From Salpingoeca rosetta (taxonomy: Eukaryota > Protista > Choanoflagellata): a stretch of DNA of 64,000 nucleotides. Under the pieces are notes generated by a model. That model had not been told where the DNA came from and made no database searches. It saw only the letters and a list, made by a program, of their open reading frames with translations. The stretch is taken from NCBI GenBank assembly GCA_033442325.1, contig JAWQFM010000006.1, positions 1,255,124 to 1,319,123 on the forward strand, given 5' to 3'. The translations under genes were made by a program, and so were the position numbers. Of the stretch, positions 32,727-63,787 are shown one piece after another. The number at the start of each line of letters is the position of its first letter. Positions within the stretch are counted from its first letter, which is position 1.

Positions 32727-35700
32727 ATGGCCACCTGGAGAAAGGCCCACAAGGCCTGGATGGAAGCTAGAGCCTCGAAGGAAAAACAAGCATGCATTCC
32801 ACCTCTCTTCAATGCCGTCCTGGATGTCGCCTCCAACTTTGCCAAAGTCGCCGGCCAAACGGAGTGGTCCAAGCTGGTCAAGGGCCTGGGCTTCCTGCCG
32901 CAGTACTTCACCGCCTCGTAAGCAACCCGTGTTTTGGTTTATGTTTTGGTTCATGTGGTGTTCCTCCTATGTCCTCCAGCTCTCCTGCACTGCCCCTTGT
33001 CCGGTTGTGGGCACCTTGTTGACTTTGGTGTGCTCACATCACTGTGTCCACTCATCATGCATGGTTTTGACTCACAAGTCGGACACATGTCACTCAGCAA
33101 CTTGTCTACTCACTCACACACACACACACACACACACTCACTCACTCACTCTCTCACACAAACGCACACACTCTCACACACACACACACATACACACACA
33201 GGACAACCCTTCGCGAGGCTGCGCTGGAGCTGGCCGTCGCCGTGCTCAGCAACGAGGATGCTCGAGCAAACTTGACTGAGGCCGCCGACGCCAGCGCATC
33301 TTTCCTCCAGCTCCTCAACACTGTCGTCGATCACTTTGTGGGCGCAAGCACTGATCCGGATACGATGAGTGGCCGGTCATTTGACCTGTGCGCCCAAATC
33401 TGTGTGCTCCTGCTTGAGCACAGGAACATCCTCGACACTGCCCACCGCCAACCGGACCTCCTCCGCACCCTCGCTCGTGCTTCGGTGCGCCAACCCCAGA
33501 TTCGTGAACACGTGTACCGTCACAAGAACAAGGGCATCGTCCACACGCTGGATGCCGCGGACACCAACAGCAAGGTGAGAAAGCCCTACAACACTGCCGC
33601 ACACACGCACACGCACACGCACTGTCACACAACACACGCACACGCACATGCGCACATAGGCACGCACACGCACTGTCACACATAGACACGCACGCACATG
33701 GTCAGTCTGTATCTGGACTGCATAGCCTCGTCCTCTTGCACATTTCGCCTCGTTCTGCTCATCATCCCTTGCATTGTCCATCACCACGAACAGGGACCAT
33801 CCTCCCTTGTGCCCAACTTTCGATTCACCTGGACCGATGATCGCGTGGATGAGATGAGCCAGACGACCTGGGAGCACCAGCGCAAGCTCTGGCGTGTCGC
33901 TGACCCCCACCACTACCGCAGATTCACAGGCACGTCTCATGAACTGTGTGTTTGCGCTCCTGTGCGCGTGCATCGCATGTGTTCATCAAGCCATTGCTGT
34001 TGCATGGCCATGCAACCAACGACACACACACACACACACCACGCACGCATGCATGCGTGCACTTCACACATGACGCGGCAACGACACTCACCCCTTTCTC
34101 CTCCCCCTTACATGTTTGGACTGCAACACAGGCCCCGACACCCTCGCCCGCGTCTTTTCCCTTCTCACTTCAACCGATGATGAGCTCAACGATTTCATTC
34201 GCCATGTGCTGCGTGAGTCCCTCGCCGCAAATCTCACCGTCGACGAAACCAAGTACCTCATGTACAAGCTGGGCGCCGTTGCATTTTCGACCGACGTCAG
34301 CAACACCCACGTGCCCGCGTTTTGTCGACTGCTGGACGTGTCAGCGTGGGAACGCGCATTCACCGTGCTCGCTGGCGCTGCATCGGACGCCGAGGCACAC
34401 GAAGCCTTCCTCCAGTCCCCTGCTCTCGCAACTGTCTGTGCTGCCGTTCGTGGCACTCTGGAATCGGGCTTGGCCGAATGGCTCTGCCAGCCAGCTCAGG
34501 ACAACATCGCCCGCACCCGTCTCCTCCAAGCCGTTCAACAGCACGTGGACACAACGCTACAGCTGTCAGCCTCCGTCGCGGGCTCCTCAACGACACCGCC
34601 ATCTGACACTCTTCAAGCATCCCACACGCCCCATATCAACTCCACCAGTGCACTGGACACTCCCCAGCCCGACTCGGCACTCGGCACGTCCGTCTCGCCC
34701 AAACCTTCCTCGCCTGACTCTGCTACAAAGCCCCGTGATGATCTCAGCAACGCTGCTGATGATGATGATGACGATGACGATTGGGGTGATGGTCACGATG
34801 ACCAAACCGACCATATCAGCAATGATGCCAATGGTGCCAATCACACCACTGCTGCCGATAATGATGATGATGATTGGGGCGATGACAGCACCACTGACAG
34901 CACCACTGACAGCACCACTGTCAGTACCAGTCCTCAAACGGATGCTGACACCCGCGCAGCTCTCATCCAGCGCGTGACCGACCTCATCAAGGAACACTTG
35001 AGCGCACTGTACCACCTCGTTCTCTGCCGCACAAACACCATCCTTCAATTTCACCTGCAATCCAGCAACACAGAGGCAGTCTCCACGGTCTGTGTTGAGG
35101 TGCTGGAGATTGTGCACAAGAGCAGCACCTTGGCCTTGCTGGACCTGCATGAGGTTACCGACCTGAAGGATCTCCTCTCCAATCTCCTGCGCATCAACAC
35201 CGCCCCGTCCGATGGCCTCCTCGTCGCCCTCGTCTGCCACATCCACCCAAAGCCTGCCACGCTGCATCACCTTGCCACAGAGTCGAACAGGCGCCGCCTC
35301 CTCGGTCGACTCCAACTCGTTCAACGCATCCTGGTTGAGTGTGTGGAGCGTGATCCCTCTGAAATGTACAACGCAACGGAAGAGACCCTCGACCTGCTTG
35401 CTGCAGCCGTGCCAGACCACACCGCCTGTCCGGCTGACTGTGCCGCTGCCTTCCTGGCCATCTTCGGCAGTTCCGGTGCTTTCCAATTCACGCCAGCCCA
35501 CGCCAGCCACATCATCGAGGTCCTGGCTGCCACGTCGCTCGATGGTGAACATGCCACTCCAAGCAACACTCCAGCCACTCATGCTACAACTGTGATGGCG
35601 CCCACCACAACAACAGCCCACGCCTCTGTCGCTGACCCAAAGACTGAGCAGCGCACGCGCCTATGCATGCTGCTGCTCTCCCTCACCCGTTCTGCTGATA

Positions 35701-38700
35701 AGGAGGTGATCCAGCGCAATTGGCAGCCCATCGCTGACAGGCTCCTCGCCGGCCTGCCCCTCATCACAGCCACGCCACAGCAGCACAAGGCGTGTTGGCA
35801 CGTCCTCTTCCGTGCAGCGCCAGCCCTGACTGCGAGGACCAAGATTCTAGCCGCCTTGTTCGAATTCTGCATGCAGCAGTGGCTTCGGCACGACGAGCTA
35901 GCGTGGGCAAAGGGAGACGCCCTTGTCGACACCCTTCAAGTGCTGTCTCAGAGCAACCGCAACCGCACCCGCAACCTTATCAAGGACCAGATCGCCAAAG
36001 CCATGCACACGCTCACGCACATGCTATCGTTCGACCGTCAGACCTCCCCAGCGTACGCCCTCTTGTTTGAGCTCGTGAAGCCCCACGACCTAGCCTCCGT
36101 CATCGAAGACCACGATAACGATGGCGAGTTCGACAGTGGTGCTCCATCCCACAGTGAGCATCTGCTCGTCAGCGCCACAGATGCAGACTCCAAGTTCCCT
36201 CTCCCCGCAGCATTCAAGGAAGGCCTACAGCATGCTGTGGCAGAGTACAACACGAGCGAGGCTGACCCTTTCGAGATTGTCAGCGATGGCGAGCGCGCCA
36301 CCTTTAACGGCCACGTCCTGGGCAACTGCTTCAACTCTGCTCGCGCGTATGCACAGGCTTGCAAGATGTTTCCGGCAGCAGACGGGGGCGTGGTCCCCAC
36401 AACCCGCACCCTCCAGTACCTCAAGACCATCTTGTCCACACTTCGCACTAACGACAACCTGCTCCTGCAAGGCGAGACTGGTGTGGGCAAGACGATGCTG
36501 ACGCTCTTCGCCGGCCATCTCGCCAACCAGGTCGTGCTGCGCTTCAACGGGTCATCACACAGCAGCGTTGAGGACCTCTTTGGCAGCGTCACCAACGACC
36601 CCACCAAGCCCGGCCACTTTGGACTTGCCCCTGGCCCCGCCATCCTCGCCTACACTTTTGGCTATTGGCTGTACATTGACGAGGCAAACCTGCTCAAGGA
36701 GGAGCTGGTGCAGACTCTGGCCTGCCTAACTGAAGACCGTCTCTCTCTCGCCCCCTTTGCCAAAGGCCTCTCGATCCTCGACTGCACCTCCGCTTACACG
36801 GGCAAGCCCCTGCCCATCATTGGCAGCGGCAGTGGCGGTGATGATGCTGCCCTTGTGCGAAAACACAAGAACTTCCGTCTCATCTTCGCCCAGAACCCTT
36901 GCGACAGCAGATACAACCGCGAAAAGCACAGCCTCAACGTCCTCAGTACCTTCGTGCCACTGGATGTGACGTGGGGCTCGAACCTTGCATCCCGCAAGGC
37001 CGAGTGGAAGATGATCGTTACCAGTGCCCTTCGTGGTGTTCTGCCTGAAGACATCCACCACAGTCTGTCTTCCGACAAGTTGGCGAGCCAGCTGGTGGAC
37101 TTTCACGTGCGAATCACAGATGCACAGCTCCTCGAAGAGCTTCGTGCCATGGAGAACGAGGGCGAGGTGTACGAGCAGCAGCACTTCATGGACTTGACGG
37201 TGCGCGAGCTCAAGCGTTTTGCCAGCGCGTGTCGCGCATACATGGGCCGCCTCAAGGGCTCCGCTTCGAAGGCTTTTCAAACACACTTGACAGCCTTTGG
37301 GCTCATGCTCTCCTCCATCTACGGCGCCCGTTTCCAGTGTGCTGCGTCCCGCCAGCGCATTGCCGAGATTGCATTTGAATGCCTCAACGCAGATCAGCCG
37401 CAAGCAACAGGAGCCTCTCCTCAAGGCCGGTTGCAGATGCATGCGCAGGCTGTCTTCATTGATGGCATCCCACTCCAGCGCAAGGTGGCCGCACCCGAGC
37501 ATGATATCGTGGACATTGTTCACGACAAGATCATGCAGTGCGCGACACACCCCAATTTCATGCTCAAGTATGGCTGCTACGACTTTGTCAACCATGCATG
37601 TGTGGACCGCGTTCATGCCCTGATGCGCGATGAAAGCGTGTCGCTGGGTCATGCGCTCTTGCACGCGTATGTGGCGCCAATCCGCTGTGTCCGTGCTCGG
37701 GCGGACCTTCTCGCTGACATTTGCAAGACGCTTGATGCCACGCATGCAGCGGAGGCCCAGCGCCTGCGTAACGTCGACCCATCCTCTCTGCTGGAACCCG
37801 ACCAGTACATCTGTTCGATTGTGGTGACACCAGAGCTGGTGACAGCAGCACGCGAGTGCGCAGTGGCGTTCCTCCTGCGCACACCCTTGATGATCTGCGG
37901 CCCGAGCGGCGCTGGCAAACAGGTTCTCGTGCGCTTCCTGTCTGCCCTGACCAACATCAGTCTCGCCCACCTTCACCTGACAAAGGAGACGGAGGTGCAA
38001 GACTTCATTGGCATGGCCATCCCAGAGACAGACCACGCGACAGGGGACATGAACCTGCGGTGGCACGATGGCCACTTGCCTCGCACCATGCGCAATGGCG
38101 GCATTCTGGTCCTTGATGACATTCTCTCCCTGCAGTCGTCTGTGCTCGAACGGCTCAACCCGGTCTTGGAGGAGAAGCCCACGCTCGTGCTGTCCGAGAA
38201 CAACCAAGTCTCACCGATACCTGAGGACGAGATCAGCGACTTTCTGCGCTTTGTCGCCATTGTCGAAGCAAGGAACAAGGCCATGACGCCCGCCTTTGGC
38301 AACCGCTTTCACATGGTGTACCTCAACCCGCCGCCACAGGAACCATCGACGTGGCTCGTGGCTGCCAGCCGTCTCTTGCTCGGTCACGAAGCGGGTGATG
38401 GGGAATGTCCACGTGATGTCTGTGAGCTGACAGCCAAGGCACACCAAGCCTGGTGCAGTTCAGAGGAGCGACCCAGTGTGCGGCGCTTCGTGATGCTGTT
38501 TGATGCCGCGTTTCACCTCACCCGCGGTACTACACCTCCCCCACTCAAGAACAAGGCTGCAGCCGCGGTGGGAGAGGCGTGTGAGCTCGTGCTCGCCCAA
38601 CACCCGAAAACGGCGGAAGCTCTCAAGCAGCAGCTCGTCAATTCCCTTCCACCCAACAGCGTTGACTATGTGGAGGCATTGCTGACGTCACCTCAGCCTG

Positions 38701-41700
38701 ATGGTGGGGTAACCTTTGTCCTGGACAAGGACACAACACCACGGGTGTATGCAAACGCGAACAAGGTGCTGCGCGCCCTCAAGGCACGCGTTCCTGTCGT
38801 GTTTGAGGGCAGTCAGGCCGTGGGCAAGACGGCAACCGTGACTGCTCTCGTCCACTGGTTGACGCACAAGGCGATTCTGCGCAAGACCAACAGCGATTCC
38901 ACGCAAGCCACGGACTACCTCTCCTACTGGCGTCCCAGCAAGCAAGGCAACTTTGCCTTTGAAGAGGCAGAGTTCGTGCGCACCCTGCGCAACGGCACAT
39001 GCTTCCTGAACGACGAGTTCAACCTCGCCAACACGTCCACCCTCCTCTCTGTCTTCATCCCTGTGCTTGACAGCGGCTGCTTGGCGCTTCCAACCGGCGA
39101 GTACGTGCACAGAGCACCTGGCTTCTGGCTTGCAGCTTGCCAGAACCCCGTTGGCTTTGCTGGGCGCAAACCTTTGGCTCGCAAGCTGGCTGACCGCGTG
39201 TGTGTCGTGCCGTTTGAGAACCTGACACTGGACGAGCTGACGGAGATTGCTGCCAAGCGCACAAGCAACGCCATGAGCACAGACATGCTGCGCAAGTTTG
39301 CTCAGCTGCAGGTGCAGATGCGGGAGTACACCGCACTCAAGCAAGACCCGGCAGTCACCGTGCGCGAGGTGTGTCGCTGGACACGCCGCATGCAGGCCAC
39401 GCCAGACTCAGCGCCTCACGCCGTTGCGAACGGCATTGAGTTGCTGGTGGGGCGATCACAAGGCCAACCGCAGCTTGTCGATTTGGTCACGAAAGCGTTT
39501 GCCAACGAAGAAGACGGCCAGAACGTTGACAGATTGCACAGCGTAATGGCGGGTGGGGATTCCATCCCCGATGTTTGCTCTTTTACACTCCCTCGTGATG
39601 GCTGCGTGGAAATCAGATATGAGGGCCATCCAGCGTCAACAGTTCGGGTCGAGACACAGCTGCCACCAGCCGCCATTGCACCATTGCTGACAGCACCCTG
39701 CTTCAAGTCCAAGCAGTTTTGCCTTGATTTCTACCGCCTCTGCAAGTGCTACACAAACAAGGAGCCTGTGCTGTTGATTGGCCCCACGAGCCGTAAGACT
39801 CTGCTCGTAGAGATGCTGGCCAAGGTGACGGGTCGCCCGCTCTCAGCCTACACGCTTGGAACGGATTCGACGGCAGAAGAGCTCATTGGCCGCGTCCTGC
39901 CAACAACACTCGACGCGCAGATGGCAAGTGCCGTCGATGTCATCAGGCGCATCGACACCATCCTTGCTGCTCAAGGCACTGCTGATGCATCCTTGACCGG
40001 CCAGGCGTCTTTGCTGGAAACGGCTGCTGGGTTCATCGGGAGAGCCGACCTCAACTACACGGACGTGGGCCAGTGGCTTGAGCAAGTTGGTGCCGTGTTC
40101 CCTGCTGCTTCATCGTTCGTGGAGGAGGGAAAAACACTCCTCAACGATTTGCAGGTGACCCCGAACAAACAAGGTGATGAGTATGGCGATCCCTACGCGC
40201 GCACCGAGCACAACGGAGATGATAGTAGCAGTGATGGCGAAGATGATGATTGGGGTGACGATTCAAATGAGCGGTCATTACTCCCCACTTCCGCAGCGGG
40301 TGATGGCACGGAAAGTGTTAGCCATGGCAATGCCGACGATGACGAGGATGATTGGGGTGACGAAGATGCAGACGGTGATGACGATGACGATGACTGGGCC
40401 GATGATGGTGGCGCTGATGATGATGCGGGTGCCACACGAGGCAATGTGAGCAGTGACGACGACAGCTGGGGTGGTGACACCAGCGAGCACAGCTCCCGTC
40501 GCTCGTCCTCATCACTCAGTGTCATGGATGAAGAACCCCAGGACGCATGGTGGCTTCAAGAGGACATTGTGACACCAGGCAATACCGCCGATGATGAACC
40601 GCAGACAAACGCCGTGGACGTGCGAATCTCCGAGCTGAAGCTCAAGGTTGTGGTGTACAAGGTTGCCTTGCAAGCGCTGCAGTTCATCACAGCGTCTGTG
40701 TCGGCCGTTTCCGAGAGCCGTGACGAGCACACACAAATGCAACAAGAGCTGGCGGCTTGTGCTGGTCTTCTTCGTCACAGTGTGGATGCCCTCCTCAAGG
40801 AAGATGTTCAGCACTCGTCTGAATTCCAGCGCGCGCGCTTCCAATTCAAGGACGGCCCAGTCACGGACGCTGTGCGGCGTGGTGGCATGCTGCATCTGCG
40901 TGACTTGCACCGCGCCCCTGCATCTGCTGTGGAGAAGTTCAACTCTCTCTTGGAGTTGGAGCCTTCGCTCGAGACAAGCGAGTATGGCAACATCGACTGC
41001 CCGCAGTCGTTCTTCTTTGTCGCTTCCGTGACATCTGATCGCCAGCTCTTTGAGTGCGGCTTGTCACCGGCTCTCATCTCGCGCGTCACCGTCATTGACG
41101 TGCAGCCGTACACCAACACTGAGTTTCAGCACCTGGTCAGAGGCGCCCTCGGTAGCGTGGCAGATACGACGAACGAGCTTGCCCACTTCATCAACGACGT
41201 GTTTGAAGCATATGGCTCCTTCAACACGCGCCTTGCGTACCAGATGATTGGCTTTGTGCAGCGACACAAGGACCGCTTCGTCCGCGTGCAAGACGGCGTT
41301 CTTCACGCTGTGGCGGCGCTCATAGCGCCTCGGCTGGATGACGCGGGAATTGACAAGCTCAACAAGGTCGTGACAGATCGATTCCAGTTCAGACTGGAGG
41401 AGTTTGAAAAGCAACCCGTTGGCTTCTATTCACTGCCTCCCGCGCGACAAACAACGCATGCATCCTCGACACCAACGCAGCAGCCACAGAAGCTGGAAAT
41501 CATCCCTGGCGAGCACATCCTGGAACAGGCACATTTCTTCTCAGCTGACGGTGATGGTGTGGTGTTCGGTCTTGGTCCTTTCTGCATCAGAAGTGTGCAC
41601 ACGTCCGCAGATGTGGCGCCAAATCTGCAGCTGTATCCCGGCATGAGCACCAACCACAATCTTCGCGCGATGGCTCGCGTTTTCAGCGCAGGACTGTACC

Positions 41701-47700: not shown

Positions 47701-50700
47701 ACTTTGGCGGCGCAGTTTCCGTCACCAAACGCGCCATCAAGTCATTTGAGCATGCGTTGTCCCAATGTGACCTGTCCACCGGCACCTTCAAGTTCAGTGT
47801 GAAGGTGCTGCACTCGCTCAGCGTGCTTCACATTTTGACGCTTCCGCGGCCACTGATCGACTTTGCTTTTGCGTTGTCGCGAACCTCCGCGGTGGAAGCC
47901 AACGTGGATGTGCCTGTTGCGGTGGGTCAGTTTGTGGAGGGCACGCTTCCTGAGTATGCTCGAGCGCTGCTTCAGAGCGCCTTGTCTGGTCAGCCACCAT
48001 CAGTGATCGACGCGCTGGATGAGGTACTGCCACCTCCGAGTGAGGTGGAAACATTGGACGCTCTCATGCCTTGGGAAGGTGTGCTGTCGAACATCTCCAC
48101 GATCAATTTCACGCCCACTTCAGCAGGAGCTGTCCCAGCCACGACCTCAGACACCGAAGGGCCGTCCATCTTGACAGCATTCACCGCAGCATTTGCGCAA
48201 CTCCTCTCCTTGGAAGTGCTGCTTCCGTGCTCGTTGGCCTTGAACCAAACAGCCAACCTCGCATGGGGTACTGCGGCCACGCGCTTCAATGAGTCACTGC
48301 AGGAAGGCCTCTCCTTGCTTCAACACAACCATCTGGGGACGCTGACCATCCAGGACGAAGAGCTGCTGCAGCTGCTCTGCTTTGGATCGGCCTTGTCCTC
48401 TCTTCAACAAGACGTGCAGCATGCCTGCACTCAAGCTGTCGAGGCAATGCGCAACGTCGTGGGTGCTGACAGCGACGACGACGTTGAGATTGGCGAGGTG
48501 GATGCGCTCTCCAAGCTAATGTACCTTTCGGTGTTTCGGGTGAATGCTGGAAGCGCTTTTGCAAAAGGGCTGGATCTGGCTGCCTGCAAGACTGCACTTC
48601 AGCGCTACAAGAAGGTTGTCTTGGAAGAGCAGCGCAAATGGTCTGAGTTTGTCGACACGCAACTTACCGCGCACGCTCATACGCCTCGCATCACGCGCTC
48701 GGTGGCAGACGACATACGAGAAGCATTGCGACTGTGCAAGAAGTGGATCTTTACTTCGTTGTGGAATGAGCTCACCCTCAAGCGCGCCATTGAACGTCAC
48801 CAGAATCTGCTGGCACTGGCTGAAGAGCTGGGGATGCAGGATGTGCTGGGAGAGCTCGATGTGCACGACATTGTTAAAACACGAGGCTGGTACTCGAGTG
48901 ACTTCCATGTTATCCCTCCTGAAGGAAAACTGTTTTATGTACCAGGCGGGCGGCGGCTCTTCGAGCCAGGGGAGTGGCCGGACGATTCCACGCTCCTTGG
49001 CAGATTGCCAATGGTGCGTGATCCTGTGGTCTCGCAGTACTTCACCTACCAAGATGAGTGTCGCCTGGCTGATCTTGAAAGGAAGATTCGAGCCAAGTCA
49101 GATCCTCGAACACAAGTGGATGTATGTGCACGCCGTGGCGAACAGGTGTTGCAGGATCTGCTGGTTGCAGCGGCTGACGTGAACGCCGCTCTGTCTGGGC
49201 TGCGTTCCAACGGCACCAAGCAGCTGATGAAGGCAATGACACGACTGTCACCGCCAGATCACCTGAACCTGGCCGCCAATGGAATCGAACCTGCGCTGGC
49301 GCGCGCAGCCGAAAACCAGTACACCAAGGCTGCTCGGGTTATCAGCGATGCCGCTCAAGCAGTCGAGTCCGCCGCCAAAGGTATCACGCAATGCCAACAG
49401 ATGAACGGCATCATGCGCGATCTGCACGAGTTGCAGGCTCTGACAGATTCAACAACTTCCCTGCAAACTGCACTGCCAGCCATGCAGCAGCAAGTTGATC
49501 GACTGGTCAAGCGGTACTCGACCCGAGAACCAGAGCAGCTGTGCAAGGGCGTGTGTCACATGATGACAATGACCAAGGACCGCTTGGAGAGCTTTGAGGC
49601 ATTGCTGAAGCAGGCAGATGAGCTGCACAAGAACGTTTTGAAGGAGTGTCCATCCGGCTCTGAGGCGAAGCAGCTGGTGGTGACCATCGCAAACAACCAG
49701 CTGTCATTGCAACCCTTGCTTGTTGAGCTGTCGGCAGAGAGTGCGACCATGCATTCCTCTGGCGACGATGCAGGTGACGAAGCTGAAGACGAGGCTGCAC
49801 ACTGTGATCCCGTTGCTATTCCATCATCTGGGAGTCGACTTGATCTCCAATTTGACGCTTGTCACTTCTATGGCGACGCATGCGAGCCATCCAAACGCCA
49901 GATGGTGGTGCGCAACACGTTTGACACGCACGTGCAGTTCAGGCTGGAGTTGGGCGGGGAGCATGAAGATGATTTCAAGGTTGCATTTGGCGAAGCAGGC
50001 ACGTTGTCTGCAGGCAGCTCAGAGGCGATTGAATGGACATTTGAGCCAACAGCCGAGGATCAGAGAATAGCAACTTGTCACATCCACTGGGAACTGCTGG
50101 ACGAAACAAGTCGCGGGGTGATTGAAATGCGACTGGTTGGCGAGTGCAGGCCTATGACCGTGGAAATGACTGTCAACGCCGACACAACAAGATGCCAGAA
50201 GCTTCCACACGATGTTTTTGAACCTTCGGTGCTCACACAGAACATCACGCTCCAAAGTCACGTGGACAAGCCGAGATGGGTGGCTCTGAACTTGGTTGGT
50301 GGCCTCAGGTTCGCCGGCACAAGCCAAACGACCAAGCAAGTTCACCTGGATGCACGAGGACAGACAACGCTGACCGCAGATTTCAAGCCACGACCGCACA
50401 TAACACCAGGGGTCTATGACGCCCAGGTGGAGCTGTACCTTCACCCATCCAAAGCACAGCTGTGCGGAGTCATTCCCTTGCAGTTTGAGATTGTGGCGCC
50501 AAAGGCGAATTTCAAGCTGCTGTGGAAGGACAAGGAGGTCGACATCAATAAGCGCGTGACGTTGAGGGGAAACCAAGTCGGGCACCCCTATCGGCTTGTC
50601 CTGCGTGTCGAGAACACAGGCACAGCGCGGCTCAAGTGCAACCGAGCAAACCACAAAGACGTCAGCTTCCCAGTGCCCGTGCAGGATGTTGTCCCAGGCG

Positions 50701-53700
50701 GCAGCCTCGAAATTCCATTCACTGTGGGACCTGATGGAGGAATTCTTCGCCGCCTTCGTGACTTGGTCAGCAAGCCAAGCAACGCTGCGTCCATTGGAAT
50801 GTCCTTGAACGACCCTGCTCAACCAACCCTCAACTTGGAGTTCAAGTTGCAGTACTCGACGCCTCAACTTCAACTGGAAAAGCCAGTCAACCTACACCAG
50901 TTGTCGTTTGACTATGACGAAGCGCAGACAGAGTACCGCCACACCTTGCTCGTGACCATCCGCAACGAAGGCAACTCGCTTGGTGTCATTGAATCTGTTG
51001 CCTCTTGTGACCGCTCAGTCCTGGCCGCCCTGCCGGATGGTGAGGATGTTGAAGTGCAAGCCAGCAAATCAGCCAACATGCAGCTGAATGTGACGACGAA
51101 GAAACCACTCTCCCGTCAAGTGACCTTGACCCTACGCACGAATTCCACCGTTACGCCAGCCCTCAACGTGAAGCTGCAGCTTGTCTTCAACTTTCCGCAG
51201 TTGCAGATTCATTCCCCAATGACTTTTGAAGGCTTTGTGTCTGGCACGGCCGTGTTCAGCAAGATATTGACAAACATTGGCTCAAGGACGTTGACTGGTA
51301 CAGCCACACTGGAGGATGGAGAGGGCATGGGACTTCAACTGCGAGCCAAGGGAGGCGAGCCAGCGACACTGTTTGGCCCATCAGCTCCAACCGCTGACCA
51401 AGTCGTCGTTGCCAAGCCAGCCGACAAAGCCTCCTTCATCACCAGAGTGGAGGTGTACCCCAAGAGCTTCATCATTGAGAGTGGGAAAACCAGGACGCTC
51501 AAGATTGCCATCAAGGGCAAGGACAAACCGAACGCTCGCCAGTTTGCTGAGGCAGTCCTGTTGAGACTGAAGACCAACGAGCCAAAGCATCTCGGGCCTC
51601 GTCATGTTGGGGTTGTGGTGAGTCCGCGTCCTCAGGTTCACGTGCCACGACTTCCATTCAGCATCAACCCTTCGAGAACACGTGAATCGTTGGTGAAGCA
51701 ATCATTTGTTGCTGCCTTCCAAGGGCGTGACGATTCTACGCCAGCCAAGGGTGTGGATGAGTTTCTGGGGTTCAAGGGACTGCCGTCATCCCCTGGTGAA
51801 CTCCGGCAGCTACTGGCTCAAGACGAGTTTGGAGTGCTGAGGTTTGATCTGCTGACGGCAATCACCAACGAAAGAAGTGCAGCAAAGGACGACATCATGC
51901 CAGTTGTGGATGGTTTTGTGCTTGGACTCTCGGCGTGTGGGGTGCCTGCATCTATTGGGCGCGAGCTTGAAACCGCCATCACGAGCAAGAAGTCATTTGC
52001 ACGGGCACTGCTTCAACTGGCTGATCATTTCGATGACGTGGACACACGTTCACTGGCCGATGCTGTAGAGCAAGTTGAGGGCACAGGGCCCAGGCCCCTT
52101 CCTGCAGGCGCCTTCTTCACACTGGTGCATGCAACAGCGTCCATGCTGGGTGTGACTGCGCTGTATCCCACGCAACCCGTGACATCCTTTGCACATGTGC
52201 GCGACCTCTTTGATCGCATCACCGCGAACGAAACAGCGCAAGCGCAAGAGGAACAAGATGCCAGCGCTTCTTCGCGACAGCTGTTCGAGGCGCTTGCGCG
52301 ACTCAGCATCCACACACCGGGCATGTTGTCGGAAACCATCACCACCTGGAAGGTTGAGCAAAGCGCGTCACAGGGAGGGAACAGCCGCTCGCTGGTGAGT
52401 ATCGTGACAAGTGCCGAGGCAACTGGCGCCACGGGATGGCGGTTAGCCCTCTCCATTATGAACAGATGCACCGCCGGTGCTGGTCGGCTGGGTCACAAGT
52501 TCGTTGACAAGTTTGTGCGCTGGGCCGAAGACCCCACCAACACTCCACCCGACTTCATCTTGCCGCATGCCGGGGGATATGCTTCAAGGAAAGACATCGG
52601 GGACGCCATCATGAGAGCCATCCCAGAGCAAAGAGACCTTGCTGACGAGCAAGTGCTCTCGCTGGCTCGCAACTTGTATCTCTGCAAGGCAAAGAAATCG
52701 AAGCTCAGTGATGAGCAGCGTCACTTCCTCAATGAGCTCGAACACAAATCAAGCGAGGCGATGAAGGTGCTGGATACGGCGATGAAGAAGCAAAACCCAC
52801 GCTGGCAGAACATTCAGGATGGCTTTTTCAAAGGCGTTGCGCACACACTCGTGTCACCATTCACGGGTAGCCCTTCTACAATTCAACTCCTGGATACAAT
52901 GTTTTCGCGTCTCAAAGACAAGGCGCCATCACCAACAAACACTGCCCTTCGTCCGCTCAAGAGCGTTGCTGCGAGCGCCTCTGCTTTGAAGACAAATTGG
53001 GCACGAATGTTTGCGCTGTTTGTTGTTCTGGACACGATGTCAAACTCAGCGCCAGTTCTCAACATAAGCCTGTCACAAGCCCTTGACCGCCATATTCAGC
53101 ACCATCCACTGTTGTGCCTTCGCATGGTGCTGCAGGCCAACACCAAGAGCCAAAAGAAAAGCAACGATGTCGATCGGCTGTGCGACGCTCTGGTCCGAGT
53201 GAAAGCCACCGGGGCGCGTGAACACGCCGCACTGTTCTGCCTTCTCGAGCTTGGTTTCCAACCATCTGAATCAGGAGGTCCGCGAACGCTGCAGGAATGT
53301 TTGGAGCAACGAAAGCTGGCCGCGAAGCTTGCCCAGCTCTTGCCAGAGTGCTTCGGTTCTTCGAGGTCAGAACACTTGAAAGAAATTGCCGCCCGACTTG
53401 AGAGCGGTGATGACTCATTCAATGGTGTGGCTCGTCACATTGAAGCAGGGGACTTTGCCGCGGCAATCGATGAGTTGCCCCTTCCCAAGACACCTACACT
53501 GAAGCTGCTACTGACGAGTCTCCGAGCATCGAAACGCGCAAAGCTGGACCCCCAACTGCTGCGCTCTCCCGATGACACGATTGCCCTCGTGGAACAGCTG
53601 GTCGACTTGATGTCTGATCCTGAGCCCATGCAGACTCTGAAAAAACCTTCTGCCGTGCAGTACTTGGGCGTCCTTGCCCATGTTGTGCACCGACTACACA

Positions 53701-56700
53701 GAAGCGTTGATGAAGATGTCGAAAGCGATGGAGTGACCGGCGAGGACGACATTCCGTCATCGCTTGTTTGTCCCATCACGCAGGACCTGTTCGACGACCC
53801 CGTCATGTTGCACGGCAACACGTACTCTCGAGCAGAAATCACGAAATGGCTTGAAGAGTATGGCACGGACCCACTCACTCGCCAGCCATCAAGCGTGGAT
53901 GACCTGATGCCAAACCGCGCCATCCGAGACGCTGTTGAAGAGTACGAACTGAAGCGGGCGGCAACTGGAAGTTGGCGAGAGGAGAGCGTGCGCGGCGAAT
54001 GGGTGGAAGCCATCTGTCGTGAGTTGGATCATGTCCAATCTTGGGCGAGGGAGCAGGCAGCTCAGACACAAGCAGATGCGAAAGAGGATGAAGAAGGTGA
54101 AGAGGGTGACGGCGCGCCACCACTGCGTACCACGTCTGATGCAAGCGGAAGCACGAGCGCTCGTCCCGCCACAACACCAGCCGTGTCAGGAAGTGGGCGA
54201 GCATGGGATGATGGTGGCGGTGATGATGGTGACAGCGAGGGAACGACATGCGTCGCAACGACATGTGTGTTCTGTGCTGCTGGAGAGAGTGGCTTGAACA
54301 TTGCAGAACTTTCAGCTGCGCCCACGAGCTTCTCGCACCATGGCCCATCTGGTTCCACCCATTCCAGGCCCTCGGAGAGCCACGACGACTTTGACGCTGG
54401 CCCCCTCGTTGCCTGTGCAGATGCGTTGATGGCTGCTCAACAACGCGTGTTTGAGCACATGAGTACCACGAGCATTATCGCGTACAGGACGAAAGCGGTT
54501 GCCGTCCTCTCATCGTTTGAGACAGCGATGGCAGCTGTTGCAGACACGACGCCAGCGACTGTGTGCGAGGCCATTGTTCGCAGCGGCCTTCAGCTGATTG
54601 TGTCTGCTCGCTCCATGCTGCACATACTGGAGCGCGTTCGAACAGATGCGCTCGTCTTGACAGAAGAAGAGTGTGTGGCGGTGATGGAGGCGGTATCAGC
54701 AGCGCTATTTTATGGGTTTGGCGCAGCCCTCCCAGAAGCCCTGCAGCACCGACTGCACAAGATTCAACGACTGCTACAACTGGAAGGTGTGCAGGCGAAC
54801 CTGCGCCACACCCAGTTCAAGTGGCTGAAGGACGAGGACGCTTGCTCTGTTGAGGAAGAAGAAGGAAGCGACAGCACGCCCAGCACGCCCCAACCTCGTC
54901 ATCGCAGACGGAAGCACGGCGACATCGACCTGCAGCATTCGCAGTCAGAGACGTCACTGGGTCACGTTGGGACGGCGTATGAAACCGGGCTTGGGAACAC
55001 CAACGAGGATGAAGATGATGACGAGGATGATGACATTGTTGGTGACAACACGACAGCTTCGCAGGCAGCAAGTTTGTACGGCTTCAATCCTGATGATGCC
55101 GTTGATCGCATGAGCATCAGTCTCAGCAAGCTCATCTTTGATAAAGGTGCAACACCTGGCGACAGCGATGGTGATCACGGGCCCAGCGGTGATGGGGGTG
55201 GATCAAGGCCTGGTGCTCATGTGCCCAGGCCAGAGCACGCTGATGGTGTTCGCATTTCTTCTTCGATGCTGGCAAACGCCGTCATCAAGACCAGTACCTC
55301 CACCTCCTCATCATCAGACAGGAAGCGAATGGTCACTTGCAAGGTCAAACTGACCAAAGAGGACATTATGGCTGCGACGAAGCAGTTCCAGCATCGGCTT
55401 GGAAGCGGGGAAGTGCGATTCCGACCTGCCGCGCTCTCTGCCGATCGTGAGGTTGGAGATGTGACCACGGTCAAAGACATTGACTTCAAGGATGGGTTCT
55501 CGTTTCAGGAGTCCCTCTTTGGTCGGCTGTGTCGTGCGCACCACATGAACATCCTGTCCCTTCAGCAAAAGGTGCTGGATCTGCTCATGCAAACACACGT
55601 TCGCGGTGTGGAGGTGCATCTTGAGGTGGCCATTCTGGTCGACAATTCGCTCTCCATGCAAGGCGGGTGCGGCAACCAAGCTCGCCAAACACTGGTGGTG
55701 CTGTTGGAGGCACTGCGGCGCCTGGAATTGAAGACTGCGGTCCTTTCGTTTGCTGGGAAGGGCCAGGAGCGGTGGCTGAAGAAGTTTGAGCACGCCATGT
55801 CCTGTGAGAAGGGTGAAGAAGTGCTGCTGCGCCTCAACTTCAACCAGTTTGGCACTGCCATTGCGGATGCAATGCACTGTGCGCGCGCGCACCTGGCCGA
55901 GCGTCGACGTACTCGCGCCGCCAGTGGCAAAGCCGTGTATCCGCAAACAATGGTGGTGATCACAGATGGCCTGTCGAGCCAGTTGAAGGCGGAGGGCCAG
56001 GCCCATTCTGCGTTCTCGCAGGTGCTGTCGAAAGCTACCTCGGAAGGTGTGAAGGTTGTTGGCATTGAGATGAACAGCTCAACGACAATTGGTGGAAGCG
56101 ACTTGCGCGGCTTGGCCAAGCATGGACTGGGATGGACCCAGCCAAACCTGGAGAGCATGAGCGTGGAGGTACCCAACGTGTTGTACCGGGTGCTGGAGGA
56201 GCAGTTGAGGCAGTACAGGGGTGTTGCTTCACGCCAGTCTCCATTCGATGGCAACCGCGTGCACCTGGGTGTCAACGGACGCAACTCAGCCTTTGAGCTT
56301 GATTTGCAGAAGCTGGCCAGCGATCGGTGGATTGACACGTACAAGCCAGGGCCGTACCGCCCGCCAAATGTGTGCGTGCAGGCCCTTGGTGCTCCACCGC
56401 AGAAGTGCAAGGCGCCAATGCTGCGTTCGGATGTGCTGCGGAAGATGCGCGTGACCCACACGACACTTCGACGCGCCGCAACCCCATGTGAACACCCCAC
56501 TCAGTGGTACACGGACACGTTGCAGAAGTACGGCCAGCAAGTGAACATGGTGCAAGATGTGCTGAAGCAGCACCTGACGAAGCGTGCATCCATGCGCAAG
56601 AAGGCCGGCTTCACCAGCGGCAAGAGCGTCAACCCAGCCAAGCTGATGCAATGCAAGGCGACCCAATTCACCTCCACTGCGTATTGGGAACGCTACGTGC

Positions 56701-58112
56701 CCGAGGGCCGGCCAGCCTACCGCTTTGCACTGGCGATTGACATGAGCGCATCCACCGGTGACACGCCAACGTCCTTCTTCAACGCGCAGTCCCTGGTGCT
56801 GCTGCTGGAGGCCTTCAAGCGATTTGGGCTGCACGATACGATTGTGTACGGGTTTGGCGAGAGCGCGTGCACGCTGATGAAGGATCGCACAGAGCACGTG
56901 GACGCGACGGCGCTGAGCACCATCGTGCGCACGCTGGCGACTGTTGGGTTTGCGCAGCAGTCGACGAACGTGGCTGCGGCCATCGCCGCTGGCGTGGAGC
57001 TGTTGACGGAGGCGAATGACAACGACGCGAGCGTTGAGACGTCGACGCTGTTTGTGTTGACGGACGATGCGCCAGATCCACAGCATGAGGCTGCGCTGCG
57101 CTACGCCGCTACCCTCGGCATTGATGTGGTGCAGATTGTGATTGGCACGGTGCCCATGTCCACGCAGCGCGCGTTCACCCGCTTCATCGAAGTGTCGTCG
57201 CCGCTTGAGCTGCCAAAGGCGCTTGACATGTACTTTGAGCGGATGCATCTTCCGCAAGCACGGAGTCAAACGGTCCCCGTGCGCAGGGGTGATTTCGTGC
57301 TGAGCGATGACGAGCAGAAGGATGTGCAGGACAAGGTCGCTGCTGAGCTGGCCAAAGACAGTCCATACCGAGAGTATCTTGCTGAGAATGCTGATGAAGC
57401 AGAAGTGCGGCTTGAATTGACCCAAGGCGCAGCTGTGACCTTAGAGGTGGAGGCGGTGATTGTGATGGACTGCACCGGATCCATGGGGCACTGGATCGAT
57501 GCGGCAAAGGCCCACGCCACCAGCATGATGAAGTTTGTGAGAGACCAAGCAGTGAGCAAGTTTGGCCGTGATGTGAACGTTCGCCTCGGCTTCGTTGCGT
57601 ACCGCGACTACGACTTTGGAACAGTATCGGAACAGTGCCCGCTGACACGAGATTTGAGACATGTTGATGCGTTCATTTCGAGGCAAGTTGCCTGCTCAGG
57701 ACGACACCGTGATGTTCCAGAGGAGGTCTTGACTGGACTCCGAGCAGCAGTGAGCATGGCGTGGACGCCGACAGCAGCGGTGAAACTGGTTGTCCTCGTT
57801 GGGGATGCACCGCAGCACGGACCGGAATTCGTCCACGAGAAGAGAGACAATCATCCAAATGGGCCTCCAGCAGGGTACCCGGACCATGGCAAGTCCCACT
57901 TGCAACGCGCAATTGAAATTACTGATGCGATGAAGGACAAGAACATTGAGCTGATCTTCACTCATATTCGAAGACAGACAGCCAAGTTTGAGGCCAAGTT
58001 GAATGAACTCCTGGACGGCAAGATGAAAACAGTCAATCTTGGCAACCACCCGGATTCGTTCGCCAGCAGCGTCCAGGAGCAGATGGTGCTCATGCTGAGC
58101 GAGCTGGGCTGA
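32727..58112 (+). CDS. Giant (~8,226 aa) midasin-like protein: helical N-terminus, six tandem AAA+ modules, helical linker, tandem Ig-like (ASH/PapD-like) domains, U-box, acidic region, three VWA/MIDAS domains; exons 32727-32917, 33202-33574, 33794-33929, 34132-58112
   Basis: 7998-codon open frame plus three upstream in-phase exons. Six Walker A/B pairs, a U-box consensus and three DxS/TxS motifs (see sub-features). Confidence 0.92.
36440..43900 (+). other. Six tandem MoxR/midasin-type AAA+ modules
   Basis: GETGVGKT/YIDEANL (~36470/36670); GPSGAGKQ/VLDDILS (~37900/38110); GSQAVGKT/LNDEFNL + QNPVGFAGRKPL...DR (~38810/39010); GPTSRKT/LRDLHR (~39780/40900); GPPASGKL/LKDIHL (~41710/41910); GPTASGKT/LNDVNFC (~42820/43400). 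Long inserts in modules 4 and 6. Confidence 0.88.
49830..51640 (+). other. Tandem beta-sandwich Ig-like domains (ASH/PapD-like)
   Basis: Repeated hydrophobic-x-N-T/E/I-G strand motifs (MVVRNTFD, LRVENTGTARL, VTIRNEGN, ILTNIGSRTL) with GTLSAGSSEAIEWTFEP, VVPGGSLEIPFTV, IIESGKTRTLKI. Confidence 0.6.
53745..53950 (+). other. U-box E3 ubiquitin ligase domain
   Basis: IPSSLVCPITQDLFDDPVMLHGNTYSRAEITKWLEEYGTDPLTRQPSSVDDLMPNRAIRDAVEEY matches the U-box consensus throughout. Confidence 0.93.
55620..58100 (+). other. Three tandem VWA/MIDAS domains
   Basis: VWA1 ILVDNSLSM..GT..VITDG; VWA2 LAIDMSAST..STN..VLTDD; VWA3 IVMDCTGSMG..GFVAYRDYD..VLVGDAPQHG. Confidence 0.9.
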
Positions 58113-58127
58113 GGCAATGTGTGCGTG

Positions 58128-58187
<60 letters not shown>

Positions 58188-58543
58188 GACTTGCGTATGC
58201 GTGTGTTTGTTTGGGGTGAGAACTGGGTCCCTTTTGCTGTGTGCACTGATACCTCAACACTTTGTCGTTGCGGGCTTCTTCCGTGATTTGTTCTCATGCT
58301 CTTGTTTGACCTTTGTTGCCACGTTTTCGTCACAACATCACGTACCCTGCTTACATGTTATCCTGCACTTGATTCATTTGTGTTTCTTGCTTGCGTTCCA
58401 CCCTTTGTTTTCGTTTGAATGAGTTTACACAACAACGACAACAACAAGTGGCAAGAGTATCACCGAGACATCATCACATTCCACAACACCCACCAAGTTC
58501 ACGACACACCACCAACAAAGCCAAAACCCACGCGAACAACAGA

Positions 58544-63755: not shown

Positions 63756-63787
<32 letters not shown>

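What the first reader, a model, noticed from the sequence alone, without database searches (positions are those of the whole stretch)
32727..58112. Giant midasin-derived AAA+ ring fused to a U-box E3 and triple VWA: candidate RNF213-like defence or remodelling machine
Seen: one ~8,200-aa chain with six AAA+ modules, a long helical linker, Ig-like repeats, a U-box, an acidic tract and three VWA domains. Known: midasin/Rea1 has six AAA+ modules, a linker, a D/E region and ONE MIDAS, and pulls on ubiquitin-like domains during ribosome assembly; it has no E3 domain. RNF213 is a separate six-AAA giant with E3 activity that ubiquitylates invading microbes. MoxR-VWA pairs occur in prokaryotic chaperone and conflict systems. 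Inference: this is a divergent midasin paralogue that gained its own ligase and extra substrate-gripping MIDAS domains, so one chain could bind, ubiquitylate and extract targets. In a bacterivorous protist, anti-microbial or anti-viral defence is a plausible role. I do not recognise this architecture as a described family.
Basis: partly seen in the sequence, partly recalled or inferred. Interest (0 to 1): 0.92.

Follow-up and report, generated by a model that had tools for sequence, protein, structure and literature searches.

The report
Giant midasin-like ATPase with ubiquitin ligase
This is a real, probably expressed gene for a protein of about 8,200 residues, found across choanoflagellates, that joins a six-part midasin-like motor ring to a ubiquitin-ligase domain and three metal-dependent gripping domains, a combination I found described nowhere.

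Summary
ATG 32727 to stop 58112 encodes about 8,226 aa: three short 5' exons and one uninterrupted 7,993-codon exon.

**Domains found**
- Six AAA_5 modules.
- A roughly 2,000-aa region that matches nothing known.
- Five ASH-type Ig domains.
- A canonical U-box.
- Short acidic tracts.
- Three VWA domains with intact metal-site motifs.

**It is not the MDN1 orthologue.** A canonical midasin lies on another contig. This ring differs from midasin in three ways: only modules 1 and 3 keep both Walker A and Walker B, module 2 has no insert, and the midasin lid families are absent. RNF213 is not a sequence relative.

**It is a family.**
- A full-length colinear orthologue occurs in Barroeca monosierra.
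- Relatives occur in Monosiga and in three other choanoflagellates (partial or fragmentary sequences).
- Some relatives carry a one-zinc-site RING in place of the U-box.
- This genome holds two paralogues. One is full-length with a U-box, with gene-conversion tracts over modules 1-3 and VWA2. The other is 95% identical, lacks the Ig domains, the U-box and VWA3, and is under purifying selection.

VWA1 folds like the Rea1/MDN1 MIDAS domain (Z 25).

**Best reading (inferred):** a machine that binds a target, ubiquitylates it and pulls it out of a complex. The defence role is untested. The ASH domains hint equally at a ciliary role. I rate it a new variant of a known kind.

The parts
32455..32706 (+). 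Intron in the 5' UTR (GT..AG), so transcription starts upstream of 32454
   Evidence: A spliced joint 32454->32707 in a contig of run X19
32727..32917 (+). Coding exon 1, starting at the ATG
   Evidence: ATG at 32727 and donor GTAAGC at 32918. An X13 contig ends at 32918. The exon aligns to Barroeca aa 20-54.
33202..33574 (+). Coding exon 2
   Evidence: AG acceptor and GTGAGA donor, in frame. Aligns to Barroeca aa 57-149.
33794..33929 (+). Coding exon 3. The donor is ambiguous: GC at 33930, or GT at 33948.
   Evidence: Aligns to Barroeca aa 166-212, E 4e-10. Enumeration of in-frame splice models.
34132..58112 (+). Giant last exon of 7,993 codons plus stop. The aa numbers used in this report count from 34116 as aa 1.
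   Evidence: Frame open from 34074 to 58112
36426..36995 (+). AAA+ module 1 (aa 771-960). Walker A is GETGVGKT and Walker B is IDE, so it is predicted to be catalytic.
37854..38351 (+). AAA+ module 2 (aa 1247-1412). It has GKQ and DD, so it is predicted to bind nucleotide without hydrolysing it. It has no helix-2 insert.
38763..39242 (+). AAA+ module 3 (aa 1550-1709). Walker A is GSQAVGKT and Walker B is NDE, so it is predicted to be catalytic.
39735..41129 (+). AAA+ module 4 (aa 1874-1942 plus 2191-2338). Its Walker motifs are degenerate. It is split by an insert of about 250 aa that is acidic and holds DDW-type motifs (densest at aa 2040-2115).
41667..42134 (+). AAA+ module 5 (aa 2518-2673). 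It has GKL and KD and is predicted to be inactive.
42774..43649 (+). AAA+ module 6 (aa 2887-2962 plus 3011-3178). It has GKT and ND, with a small insert.
43650..49835 (+). Post-ring region (aa 3179-5240), the presumed linker. It is conserved only within the choanoflagellate family.
   Evidence: Colinear with Barroeca and the C12 paralogue. No PDB or Atlas match. Its fold was not tested.
49836..51623 (+). Five ASH/MSP-type Ig-like beta-sandwich domains (aa 5241-5836)
   Evidence: AlphaFold2 model. Foldseek E 1e-28 to ciliary central-apparatus Ig-array proteins. Weak Pfam and PDB profile hits to CFAP65/FAP65.
53751..53948 (+). U-box E3 domain (aa 6546-6611)
   Evidence: PF04564, 50.2 bits. Matches LubX, PUB12 and CHIP in the PDB. 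Alignment with orthologues.
54063..55295 (+). Low-complexity segment with short acidic runs (aa 6650-7060), likely a flexible tether
   Evidence: Composition scan
55467..56222 (+). VWA1 (aa 7118-7369). Its fold is of the midasin MIDAS type and its DNSLS motif is intact.
   Evidence: VIA-align Z 25.4 to the Rea1 MIDAS domain.
56700..57242 (+). VWA2 (aa 7529-7709). Its DMSAS motif is intact.
57435..58109 (+). VWA3 (aa 7774-7998), of the VWA_4 type, with a DCTGS motif and an integrin beta-I-like fold
   Evidence: Z 21.7 to integrin beta I-like domains.
48196..54990 (+). Segment missing, in frame, from the 95%-identical paralogue at G000:C6:295377-312152. It covers the Ig array and the U-box.
   Evidence: blastn of the window against that locus. 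The paralogue's ORF has no assembly gap.
36385..39907 (+). Gene-conversion tract shared with the paralogue on contig C12 (modules 1-3)
   Evidence: 87.6% DNA identity here. Third-codon-position identity is 0.91-0.95 here against about 0.30 elsewhere.

Best explanation
The locus encodes one member of a family of ~0.9-MDa single-chain AAA+ machines found across choanoflagellates. The family is related to midasin but distinct from it.

Shown here:
- A ring of six MoxR/midasin-class modules, in which only modules 1 and 3 keep both Walker A and Walker B.
- A long region after the ring that is specific to the family.
- Five ASH-type Ig domains.
- A U-box, replaced in some species by a RING with one zinc site.
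- Flexible acidic segments.
- A VWA domain with the midasin MIDAS fold, followed by two more VWA domains with metal-site motifs.

Inferred mechanism, by analogy with Rea1:
1. The VWA domains grip an acidic residue or a ubiquitin-like domain of a target through a bound metal ion.
2. The nearby U-box recruits a charged E2 and ubiquitylates the gripped target, or the machine itself.
3. ATP hydrolysis in modules 1 and 3 remodels the post-ring region, pulling the target out of a larger assembly or switching the ligase on.

The target is unknown. The ASH array suggests a cilium- or centrosome-associated site. A role in defence is also possible.
For: Real and probably expressed:
- An 8,012-codon open frame.
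- A spliced joint and an exon-end contig in runs guessed to be RNA. The same runs hold the U-box region completely.
- Relatives in other choanoflagellates listed with Trinity-style ORF labels in EukProt, which I take to be transcriptome-derived.

Architecture.

Family:
- Barroeca P0240 (7,806 aa) is colinear over the whole length and has a U-box.
- The C12 paralogue (8,145 aa) is colinear and has a U-box.
- Monosiga, S. kvevrii and ENA P0004 have a RING-like domain at the same place.

Not MDN1:
- A canonical midasin lies elsewhere in the genome.
- The module tree separates the two.
- The motif pattern differs from Rea1's active AAA2-AAA5 (PMC11603028).

Midasin-like logic:
- Midasin is the nearest solved and nearest named relative of the ring.
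- VWA1 matches the Rea1/MDN1 MIDAS domain at Z 24-25, rmsd 3.0, 221 residues.
- The order ring, long region, flexible acidic segment, MIDAS is the same as in Rea1 (PMC11603028).

Selection: dN/dS is 0.19-0.30 against the E3-less paralogue.
Against: - No biochemical or genetic data exist. ATPase activity, E2 binding and metal-dependent ligand binding are all inferred from motifs and folds.
- The post-ring region has no detectable similarity to the Rea1 linker, and I could not fold it.
- With only two competent sites, the ring may be a switch, as proposed for RNF213, rather than a puller.
- VWA1 has no sequence-level match to the midasin MIDAS domain.
- The E3-less paralogue is under purifying selection, so the ring and VWA parts can work without a built-in ligase.
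- RNA coverage is sparse. The runs are only guessed to be RNA.
Confidence: 0.55

Rival explanations
1. It is an RNF213-like innate-immune machine. It would ubiquitylate and extract components of invading bacteria or viruses in a bacterivorous cell.
For: - The logic is the same as RNF213: a six-AAA ring plus an E3 in one giant chain (PMC7311170).
- There are three paralogues in one genome. Long stretches have diverged to saturation while the ATPase core is homogenised by gene conversion.
- The E3 type changes between species, U-box in some and half-RING in others.
Against: - No sequence relation to RNF213.
- dN/dS of 0.2-0.45 shows purifying, not diversifying, selection in every 500-codon window.
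- The architecture is colinear between Barroeca, the C12 paralogue and this gene, with partial matches in more distant choanoflagellates.
- No pathogen-sensing or lipid-binding domain was detected.
- No induction data.
Confidence: 0.15
2. It is a cilium- or centrosome-associated remodelling and E3 machine. The five ASH domains would anchor it to axonemal or centrosomal structures, where it would extract or tag components.
For: - The Ig array's best structural matches, E 1e-28 to 1e-20, are all ASH-array proteins of the ciliary central apparatus, from mouse sperm and from Chlamydomonas C1/C2.
- There are Pfam and PDB profile hits to CFAP65/FAP65, CFAP74 and ASH.
- Choanoflagellates are flagellated.
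Against: - The link rests on domain type only. ASH/MSP-like Ig folds also occur outside cilia.
- The E3-less paralogue lacks the array yet is maintained.
- There are no localisation data.
- The Hariotina giant, the one relative scanned across this region with hits reported, shows no ASH hit.
Confidence: 0.2
3. It is the organism's MDN1/Rea1 orthologue and works in 60S ribosome maturation.
For: Midasin is the best PDB match of the ring, E 9e-58. VWA1 has the MIDAS fold.
Against: - A canonical midasin exists at G000:C1, scoring 1,155 bits over 1,804 aa against 198 bits over 2,500 aa for this ring, with all the midasin lid families.
- The modules are not orthologous to midasin's.
- The active sites and insert pattern differ.
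Confidence: 0.02
4. It is an assembly chimera or a decaying pseudogene that joins unrelated pieces.
For: The 95%-identical copy on the same contig lacks the 6.8-kb segment with the U-box. In principle this could signal a misjoin in one of the two copies.
Against: - The C12 paralogue and the Barroeca orthologue have the same order of parts, including the U-box.
- Runs from 8 studies hold all sampled words of 48100-54050.
- There is no stop in 8,012 codons.
- dN/dS is below 0.5.
Confidence: 0.02

Closest known systems
Midasin / Rea1 / MDN1
   Same: - One chain with six MoxR-class AAA+ modules and helix-2-type inserts in modules 4 and 6.
- A very long region after the ring, then a flexible acidic segment, then a MIDAS-fold VWA domain (Z 25 to the Rea1 and MDN1 MIDAS domains).
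- Midasin is the nearest solved and nearest named sequence relative of the ring.
   Different: - It is not the orthologue; the genome has its own MDN1.
- There is no one-to-one module orthology.
- The competent sites are modules 1 and 3, not 2-5.
- Module 2 has no auto-inhibitory insert.
- The midasin lid families are below threshold.
- It has only short acidic runs, not a ~600-aa D/E region.
- It adds five ASH Ig domains, a U-box and two more VWA domains, and is about 3,000 aa longer.
RNF213 / mysterin
   Same: A giant single chain that combines a six-module AAA+ ring with few active sites and an E3 ubiquitin-ligase module downstream of the ring.
   Different: - No detectable sequence relation.
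- RNF213's active sites are AAA3 and AAA4, and AAA1 lacks Walker motifs (PMC7311170).
- By my recollection, which I did not check here, RNF213 uses a RING plus an RZ finger and has no VWA or MIDAS domain.
Prokaryotic MoxR-VWA pairs and giant AAA_5-VWA proteins of algae, metagenomes and Omnitrophota
   Same: - An AAA+ ring of the MoxR clade works with VWA domains.
- Modules 1-6 are orthologous module by module to giants P0007, P0008 and P0009 (Hariotina).
- The triple-VWA cassette recurs in P0195, P0158, the sponge protein P0114 and others.
   Different: None of the relatives outside the choanoflagellates that I scanned has an E3 domain or the ASH array. None is characterised.
Stand-alone U-box E3s (CHIP, PUB12, LubX) and U-box/RING-VWA E3s such as Mb_UBOXa (PMC3087547)
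   Same: The U-box is canonical, E 1e-12 to 1e-5 against solved U-boxes. The pairing of an E3 domain with a VWA domain also exists in small protist proteins.
   Different: Here the E3-VWA unit is the tail of an AAA+ giant. The short U-box proteins found by the exhaustive search carried tandem U-boxes, not U-box plus VWA.

Membership tests
Midasin/Rea1/MDN1 orthologue | It is the genome's midasin, with no other canonical copy | tested here: not met
   A canonical MDN1 lies at G000:C1:~1043336-1061298. It scores 1,155 bits to 6or5 and carries PF17865, PF17867 and PF21108.
Midasin/Rea1/MDN1 orthologue | Six tandem AAA+ modules of the MoxR/dynein class in one chain | tested here: met
   Six modules found with an iterated profile. 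Pfam AAA_5 E 1e-70.
Midasin/Rea1/MDN1 orthologue | Midasin-specific lid families (PF17865, PF17867, PF21108) above their thresholds | tested here: not met
   Only AAA_lid_7 appears, at 17.8 bits against a cut-off of 22.7.
Midasin/Rea1/MDN1 orthologue | Catalytic Walker-B glutamates in AAA2-AAA5 (PMC11603028) | tested here: not met
   DE is present only in modules 1 and 3. Modules 2, 4, 5 and 6 have DD, RD, KD and ND.
Midasin/Rea1/MDN1 orthologue | A helix-2 insert in AAA2 that plugs the ring | tested here: not met
   Module 2 matches the profile end to end without a split. The splits are in modules 4 and 6.
Midasin/Rea1/MDN1 orthologue | Modules orthologous one to one with midasin's modules | tested here: not met
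   In the maximum-likelihood tree of 83 modules, each module groups with the same-numbered module of non-midasin giants. At most an odd/even class is shared with midasin. This was a quick search with SH-aLRT support only.
Midasin/Rea1/MDN1 orthologue | A MIDAS domain in the C-terminal part that binds UBL domains | tested here: inconclusive
   VWA1 has the Rea1 MIDAS fold (Z 25.4) and an intact DxSxS motif. It is followed by two more VWA domains, and no ligand was tested.
RNF213/mysterin | Sequence homology of the ring or the E3 module | tested here: not met
   No RNF213 chain appears among the PDB matches of the ring at E <= 0.001. The E3 is a U-box.
RNF213/mysterin | Only AAA3 and AAA4 competent, AAA2 an ATP-binding glue site (PMC7311170) | tested here: not met
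   Here modules 1 and 3 are competent.
U-box E3 ligases | A U-box domain above the Pfam threshold that lacks the zinc ligands | tested here: met
   PF04564, 50.2 bits against 21.4. The alignment shows the CPIT...DPV...PLT...PN pattern without Cys/His zinc sites.
U-box E3 ligases | E2-dependent ubiquitin transfer | not testable with these tools
   Needs an in vitro assay.
MoxR-VWA systems (broad class) | A MoxR-clade AAA+ coupled to a VWA domain with a MIDAS motif | tested here: met
   CbbQ and NorQ are the next PDB matches after midasin. There are three VWA domains with metal-site motifs.

The most novel reading that the evidence does not exclude
Choanoflagellates carry a previously undescribed class of single-chain mechano-ligases. 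In these, a midasin-like ring, a MIDAS-type gripper and a U-box or half-RING act together to grip, ubiquitylate and forcibly extract a target, possibly at the flagellar apparatus. The genome supplies a natural E3-less paralogue as a control. The orthologues also capture a RING-to-U-box transition in progress.
Probability: 0.3. Interest if true: 0.8.

Novelty: new variant of a known kind. Interest (0 to 1): 0.66.

Why it matters
**A second way to build this kind of machine.** Midasin shows how an AAA+ ring can pull on a target held by a MIDAS domain. RNF213 shows that such a ring can carry an E3. [quoted passage not shown] If the parts work together, it would be an independent solution to coupling force with ubiquitylation.

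**It is testable.** I take the organism to be Salpingoeca rosetta or a close relative, which by my recollection is genetically tractable. The U-box, VWA1 and Ig parts are small enough to express on their own.

**The genome offers natural controls.** One paralogue lacks the Ig domains, the U-box and VWA3 and is under purifying selection. Another is full-length, and its catalytic modules are kept similar by gene conversion.

**Evolution of the E3 domain.** At one orthologous site, some species have a one-zinc-site RING and others a full U-box. This bears on how U-boxes arose from RING fingers.

Tried and rejected
**Searches that found nothing**
- ESM Atlas feature searches of aa 3201-5200 and 5201-7200 gave no usable hit.
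- A PDB profile search with the post-ring region found nothing.
- A phmmer search of VWA1 against the PDB found nothing at E <= 1. Only the fold comparison linked it to the MIDAS domain.
- BLAST self-comparison of aa 3100-7200 found no internal repeats, although five Ig domains are there.
- Seven literature searches for the architecture found no description. Marin 2010 (PMC3087547) lists extra Monosiga U-box genes, including a U-box-VWA gene, but not this giant.

**Ideas tested and dropped**
- *C-terminal unit derived from a small U-box-VWA protein.* The short two-stretch hits I re-blasted had tandem U-boxes, not U-box plus VWA.
- *VWA8 as the nearest family.* VWA8 did not appear in the length-matched search, where midasin fragments lead. 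The candidate set was capped, so this is weak evidence.
- *Omnitrophota giants as closer relatives than midasin.* Their higher summed scores come from many repeated AAA_5 modules. The alignments are short and not colinear.

**Errors and failures**
- My first exon model, with exon 1 ending at 32918, was out of frame. I corrected it with the Barroeca alignment.

**Not run**
- No complex prediction, because no specific partner could be named.

Full report
**1. Is the feature there?**

Frame 0 of the + strand is open from 34074 to the stop at 58110-58112. That is 8,012 codons in a window of about 57% G+C, which cannot arise by chance.

Upstream of the giant exon, three short exons have consensus splice sites. 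They align in order to residues 20-54, 57-149 and 166-212 of the Barroeca monosierra orthologue. My model is 32727-32917, 33202-33574, 33794-33929 and 34132-58112, giving 8,226 aa. The last donor is ambiguous: GC at 33930, or GT at 33948.

Public runs support the region:
- Runs from 8 studies hold every sampled word of 48100-54050, the region that contains the U-box.
- Two of the runs guessed to be RNA give sparse, perfectly matching contigs on the exons.
- One of these contigs ends at the exon-1 boundary.
- One contig shows a GT..AG joint, 32454->32707, which defines an intron in the 5' UTR.

This is modest evidence of transcription. These are contigs, the RNA label is a guess, and depth is low.

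**2. Anatomy** (aa numbers count from 34116)

*The ring.* Pfam gives AAA_5 at E 1e-70. An iterated profile delimits six modules:

| Module | Residues | Motifs |
|---|---|---|
| 1 | 771-960 | GETGVGKT, IDE |
| 2 | 1247-1412 | GKQ, DD |
| 3 | 1550-1709 | GSQAVGKT, NDE |
| 4 | 1874-1942 + 2191-2338 | SRKT, RD |
| 5 | 2518-2673 | GKL, KD |
| 6 | 2887-2962 + 3011-3178 | GKT, ND |

Only modules 1 and 3 combine a canonical Walker A with a Walker B aspartate-glutamate. The same pattern holds in the orthologues. The insert in module 4 is about 250 aa long and very acidic. D+E reaches 0.44 in one 50-aa window, and it holds repeated Asp-Asp-Trp-like motifs.

*After the ring.* Residues 3179-5240 are conserved only inside the family. 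They match nothing in the PDB or the ESM Atlas.

*Ig array.* Residues 5241-5836 fold in AlphaFold2 as five beta-sandwich domains, with pLDDT mostly 75-92. Their best Foldseek matches, E 1e-28 to 1e-20, are the ASH-type Ig arrays of ciliary central-apparatus proteins. This agrees with weak Pfam and PDB profile hits to CFAP65/FAP65, CFAP74 and ASH.

*U-box.* Residues 6546-6611 score 50 bits against a cut-off of 21.4. They match LubX at E 1e-12, PUB12 and CHIP in the PDB. About 100 U-box proteins in the exhaustive search score E 1e-10 or better.

*Tether.* Between the U-box and the first VWA domain lies a low-complexity stretch with short acidic runs.

*VWA domains.* An 18-sequence alignment and an AlphaFold2 model (pLDDT 75) show three Rossmann-type VWA domains. 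Their motifs are DNSLS (7176), DMSAS (7542) and DCTGS (7785).
- VWA1 aligns best to the Rea1 and human MDN1 MIDAS domains: Z 24-25, rmsd 3.0, 221 residues, 20% identity.
- VWA3 aligns best to integrin beta I-like domains, Z about 21.

Two corrections apply. The acidic tract before the VWA domains is short. The Ig repeats are specifically of the ASH type.

**3. It is not the midasin orthologue**

A scan of the window's own genome (55.4 Mb, 68 contigs) with AAA_5 found a separate locus on contig C1. Its exons score 1,155 bits to S. pombe Mdn1 (6or5) over 1,804 aa. They carry the midasin-specific lid families PF17865, PF17867 and PF21108. The ring studied here scores 198 bits over 2,500 aa and reaches none of those thresholds.

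Midasin is still the nearest characterised family. It is the only strong PDB match of the ring, ahead of CbbQ and NorQ. Midasin fragments lead a length-matched database search, and no VWA8 appears.

'Midasin-derived' is not shown, however. In a maximum-likelihood tree of 83 individual modules, each module of this protein groups with the same-numbered module of its choanoflagellate relatives. Beyond those, modules 1 and 3 (SH-aLRT 98), module 6 (90) and, more loosely, modules 2 and 4 group with the same-numbered modules of uncharacterised giants (P0007, P0008, and P0009 from the green alga Hariotina); module 5 does not. None groups with the same-numbered midasin module. Only an odd/even class is shared.

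The insert pattern differs too. Here the modules run whole, whole, whole, split, whole, split. In midasin they run whole, split, whole, split, whole, split. Rea1's four active sites are AAA2-AAA5, and its AAA2 insert is the auto-inhibitory plug (PMC11603028). Neither feature holds here.

RNF213 is not a sequence relative. Its competent sites are AAA3 and AAA4 (PMC7311170). The likeness to RNF213 is one of design only.

**4. It is a family, and the E3 belongs to it**

Orthologues and relatives:
- Barroeca monosierra P0240 (7,806 aa) is colinear over the whole length: 31% identity over aa 249-6309 and 40% over aa 6504-7998. It has a U-box at E 1.5e-12.
- Monosiga brevicollis P0001 (7,261 aa) is a relative.
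- Salpingoeca kvevrii P0093 is a 3,672-aa sequence covering only the C-terminal part of the architecture.
- Fragments come from Hartaetosiga gracilis and Didymoeca costata.
- A metagenomic protein, P0004, also belongs.

Where this protein, its C12 paralogue and Barroeca have a canonical U-box, Monosiga, S. kvevrii and P0004 have a RING-like domain. That domain keeps the first zinc site (CxxC...CxxC) but has U-box-like residues at the second. This looks like a RING/U-box intermediate at one orthologous position.

The triple-VWA cassette also occurs in other proteins. Examples are a 1,264-aa sponge protein and 6,830-aa metagenomic 'MoxR-like ATPase/YegL' proteins. Outside the choanoflagellates, the relatives I scanned show neither the E3 nor the ASH array.

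Seven literature searches found no description of the architecture. An earlier first-stage note of this scan (s1-435305) flagged the same architecture on another piece of this genome. That piece is probably the C12 paralogue.

**5. Paralogues in the same genome**

*(a) G000:C12:1153959-1178393.* This is an uninterrupted 8,145-codon frame. It is colinear throughout and has a U-box (E 2e-8) and VWA domains. Most of it has diverged to saturation, with third-position identity about 0.30. Two tracts stand out:
- aa 801-1800, covering modules 1-3, with third-position identity of 0.66-0.95;
- aa 7401-7800, around VWA2, with third-position identity of 0.73.

This is the signature of non-allelic gene conversion. 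It is confined to the parts predicted to be catalytic and to one gripper domain.

*(b) G000:C6:295377-312152.* This lies about 1 Mb away on the same contig.
- It is 94.8% identical in DNA from window position 32736, just after the ATG, to 48195, and again from 54991 to 57386.
- It lacks the roughly 6.8-kb segment between, in frame. That segment holds the Ig array and the U-box. It also lacks VWA3.
- It has its own ATG and first exon and no gap inside its 5,592-codon frame.
- dN/dS against this gene is 0.30 and 0.19.

It is therefore a maintained, ligase-less version. An assembly gap 1.2 kb downstream leaves its 3' end uncertain.

**6. How it most likely works**

*Shown:* the domain order; the motif states; the MIDAS fold of VWA1; the U-box identity; conservation of the whole chain.

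*Inferred, by analogy with Rea1 (PMC11603028):*
1. The VWA domains hold a target through a metal-coordinated acidic residue, possibly on a ubiquitin-like domain.
2. The flexible acidic tether lets the VWA domains and the U-box reach the ring.
3. Hydrolysis in modules 1 and 3 remodels the post-ring region and produces force or a conformational switch.
4. The U-box brings a charged E2 next to whatever the VWA domains hold.

Whether the ring pulls, as in midasin, or only gates the ligase, as proposed for RNF213 in PMC7311170, cannot be decided here.

The biological role is open:
- The ASH array points to cilium or centrosome structures.
- Paralogue turnover and the change of E3 type are compatible with a conflict role. 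However, every 500-codon window shows purifying selection, and no sensing domain was found.

The neighbouring genes are unrelated: a CAP-Gly protein, a FUT8-like fucosyltransferase, a DUF92 membrane protein and a BAHD-type transferase.

**7. Verdict**

- It is too specific about descent from midasin.
- It is unsupported as to defence.

I rate this a new variant of a known kind, namely single-chain six-AAA+ giants of the midasin/dynein/RNF213 design. It has good experimental handles.

Limits of this work:
- The organism is coded in the tools.

Noticed in passing
window 53751-53948; P0001 aa ~5879-5960; P0093 aa ~2236-2320; P0004 aa ~6153-6240: At one orthologous position, this protein, its C12 paralogue and Barroeca have a zinc-free U-box. 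Monosiga, S. kvevrii and a metagenomic relative keep only the first RING zinc site (CxxC...CxxC) and have U-box-like residues at the second. This is a possible natural RING-to-U-box intermediate.
   Followed up: partly
window 36385-39907 and 56457-58218, against G000:C12 (L013-L016): Gene-conversion tracts between two otherwise saturated paralogues on different contigs. They cover AAA modules 1-3 and the VWA2 region, with third-codon-position identity up to 0.95 against about 0.30 elsewhere.
   Followed up: yes
G000:C6:295377-312152 (L017-L019): A 95%-identical paralogue with an in-frame loss of about 2,266 codons (the Ig array and the U-box). It also lacks VWA3, has its own ATG, and has dN/dS of 0.19-0.30. 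An assembly gap 1.2 kb downstream (313381-314368) leaves its 3' end uncertain.
   Followed up: partly
window 40233-40460 (aa ~2040-2115, inside AAA module 4): A very acidic insert with repeated Asp-rich motifs that end in Trp (DDDW, EDDW, DDDSW). It recalls the acidic-Trp peptide motifs used for protein docking elsewhere. Its function is unknown.
   Followed up: no
window 34132-58112; G000:C12:1153959-1178393: Both full-length paralogues have about 24 kb of coding sequence without any intron. Three or four introns crowd the first 1.7 kb of the window's gene (the C12 5' end was not examined), and the genome's canonical MDN1 is split by introns. This fits intron loss through a processed intermediate or through conversion.
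   Followed up: no
window 33100-33200, 33590-33660, 34020-34045 and 32490-32545: The 5' introns are full of CA/CACG microsatellite-like runs. The 5' UTR intron holds a short tandem repeat (units of catgtgtctt). Logan contigs break at these places.
   Followed up: no
G000:C1:~1043336-1061298 (L021-L023): The canonical midasin (MDN1) gene of this genome, split into several exons (open frames of 546, 1,804 and 3,014 codons). Its C-terminal MIDAS part was not located, and an assembly gap follows at 1065228.
   Followed up: partly
window 4111-5727 (+), 11614-13266 (-), 58544-60043 (-), 62298-63911 (-): The neighbouring open frames match CAP-Gly, an alpha-1,6-fucosyltransferase (FUT8-like), the DUF92 membrane-protein family and a BAHD-type transferase. 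These are ordinary genes with no evident link to the giant gene.
   Followed up: partly
P0114 (Corticium candelabrum, 1,264 aa); P0195 (6,830 aa, metagenomes): The triple-VWA cassette (MIDAS-like, VWA, VWA_4 type) is a mobile unit. It also occurs on its own in a sponge protein and at the end of other AAA+ giants annotated 'MoxR-like ATPase/YegL'.
   Followed up: partly
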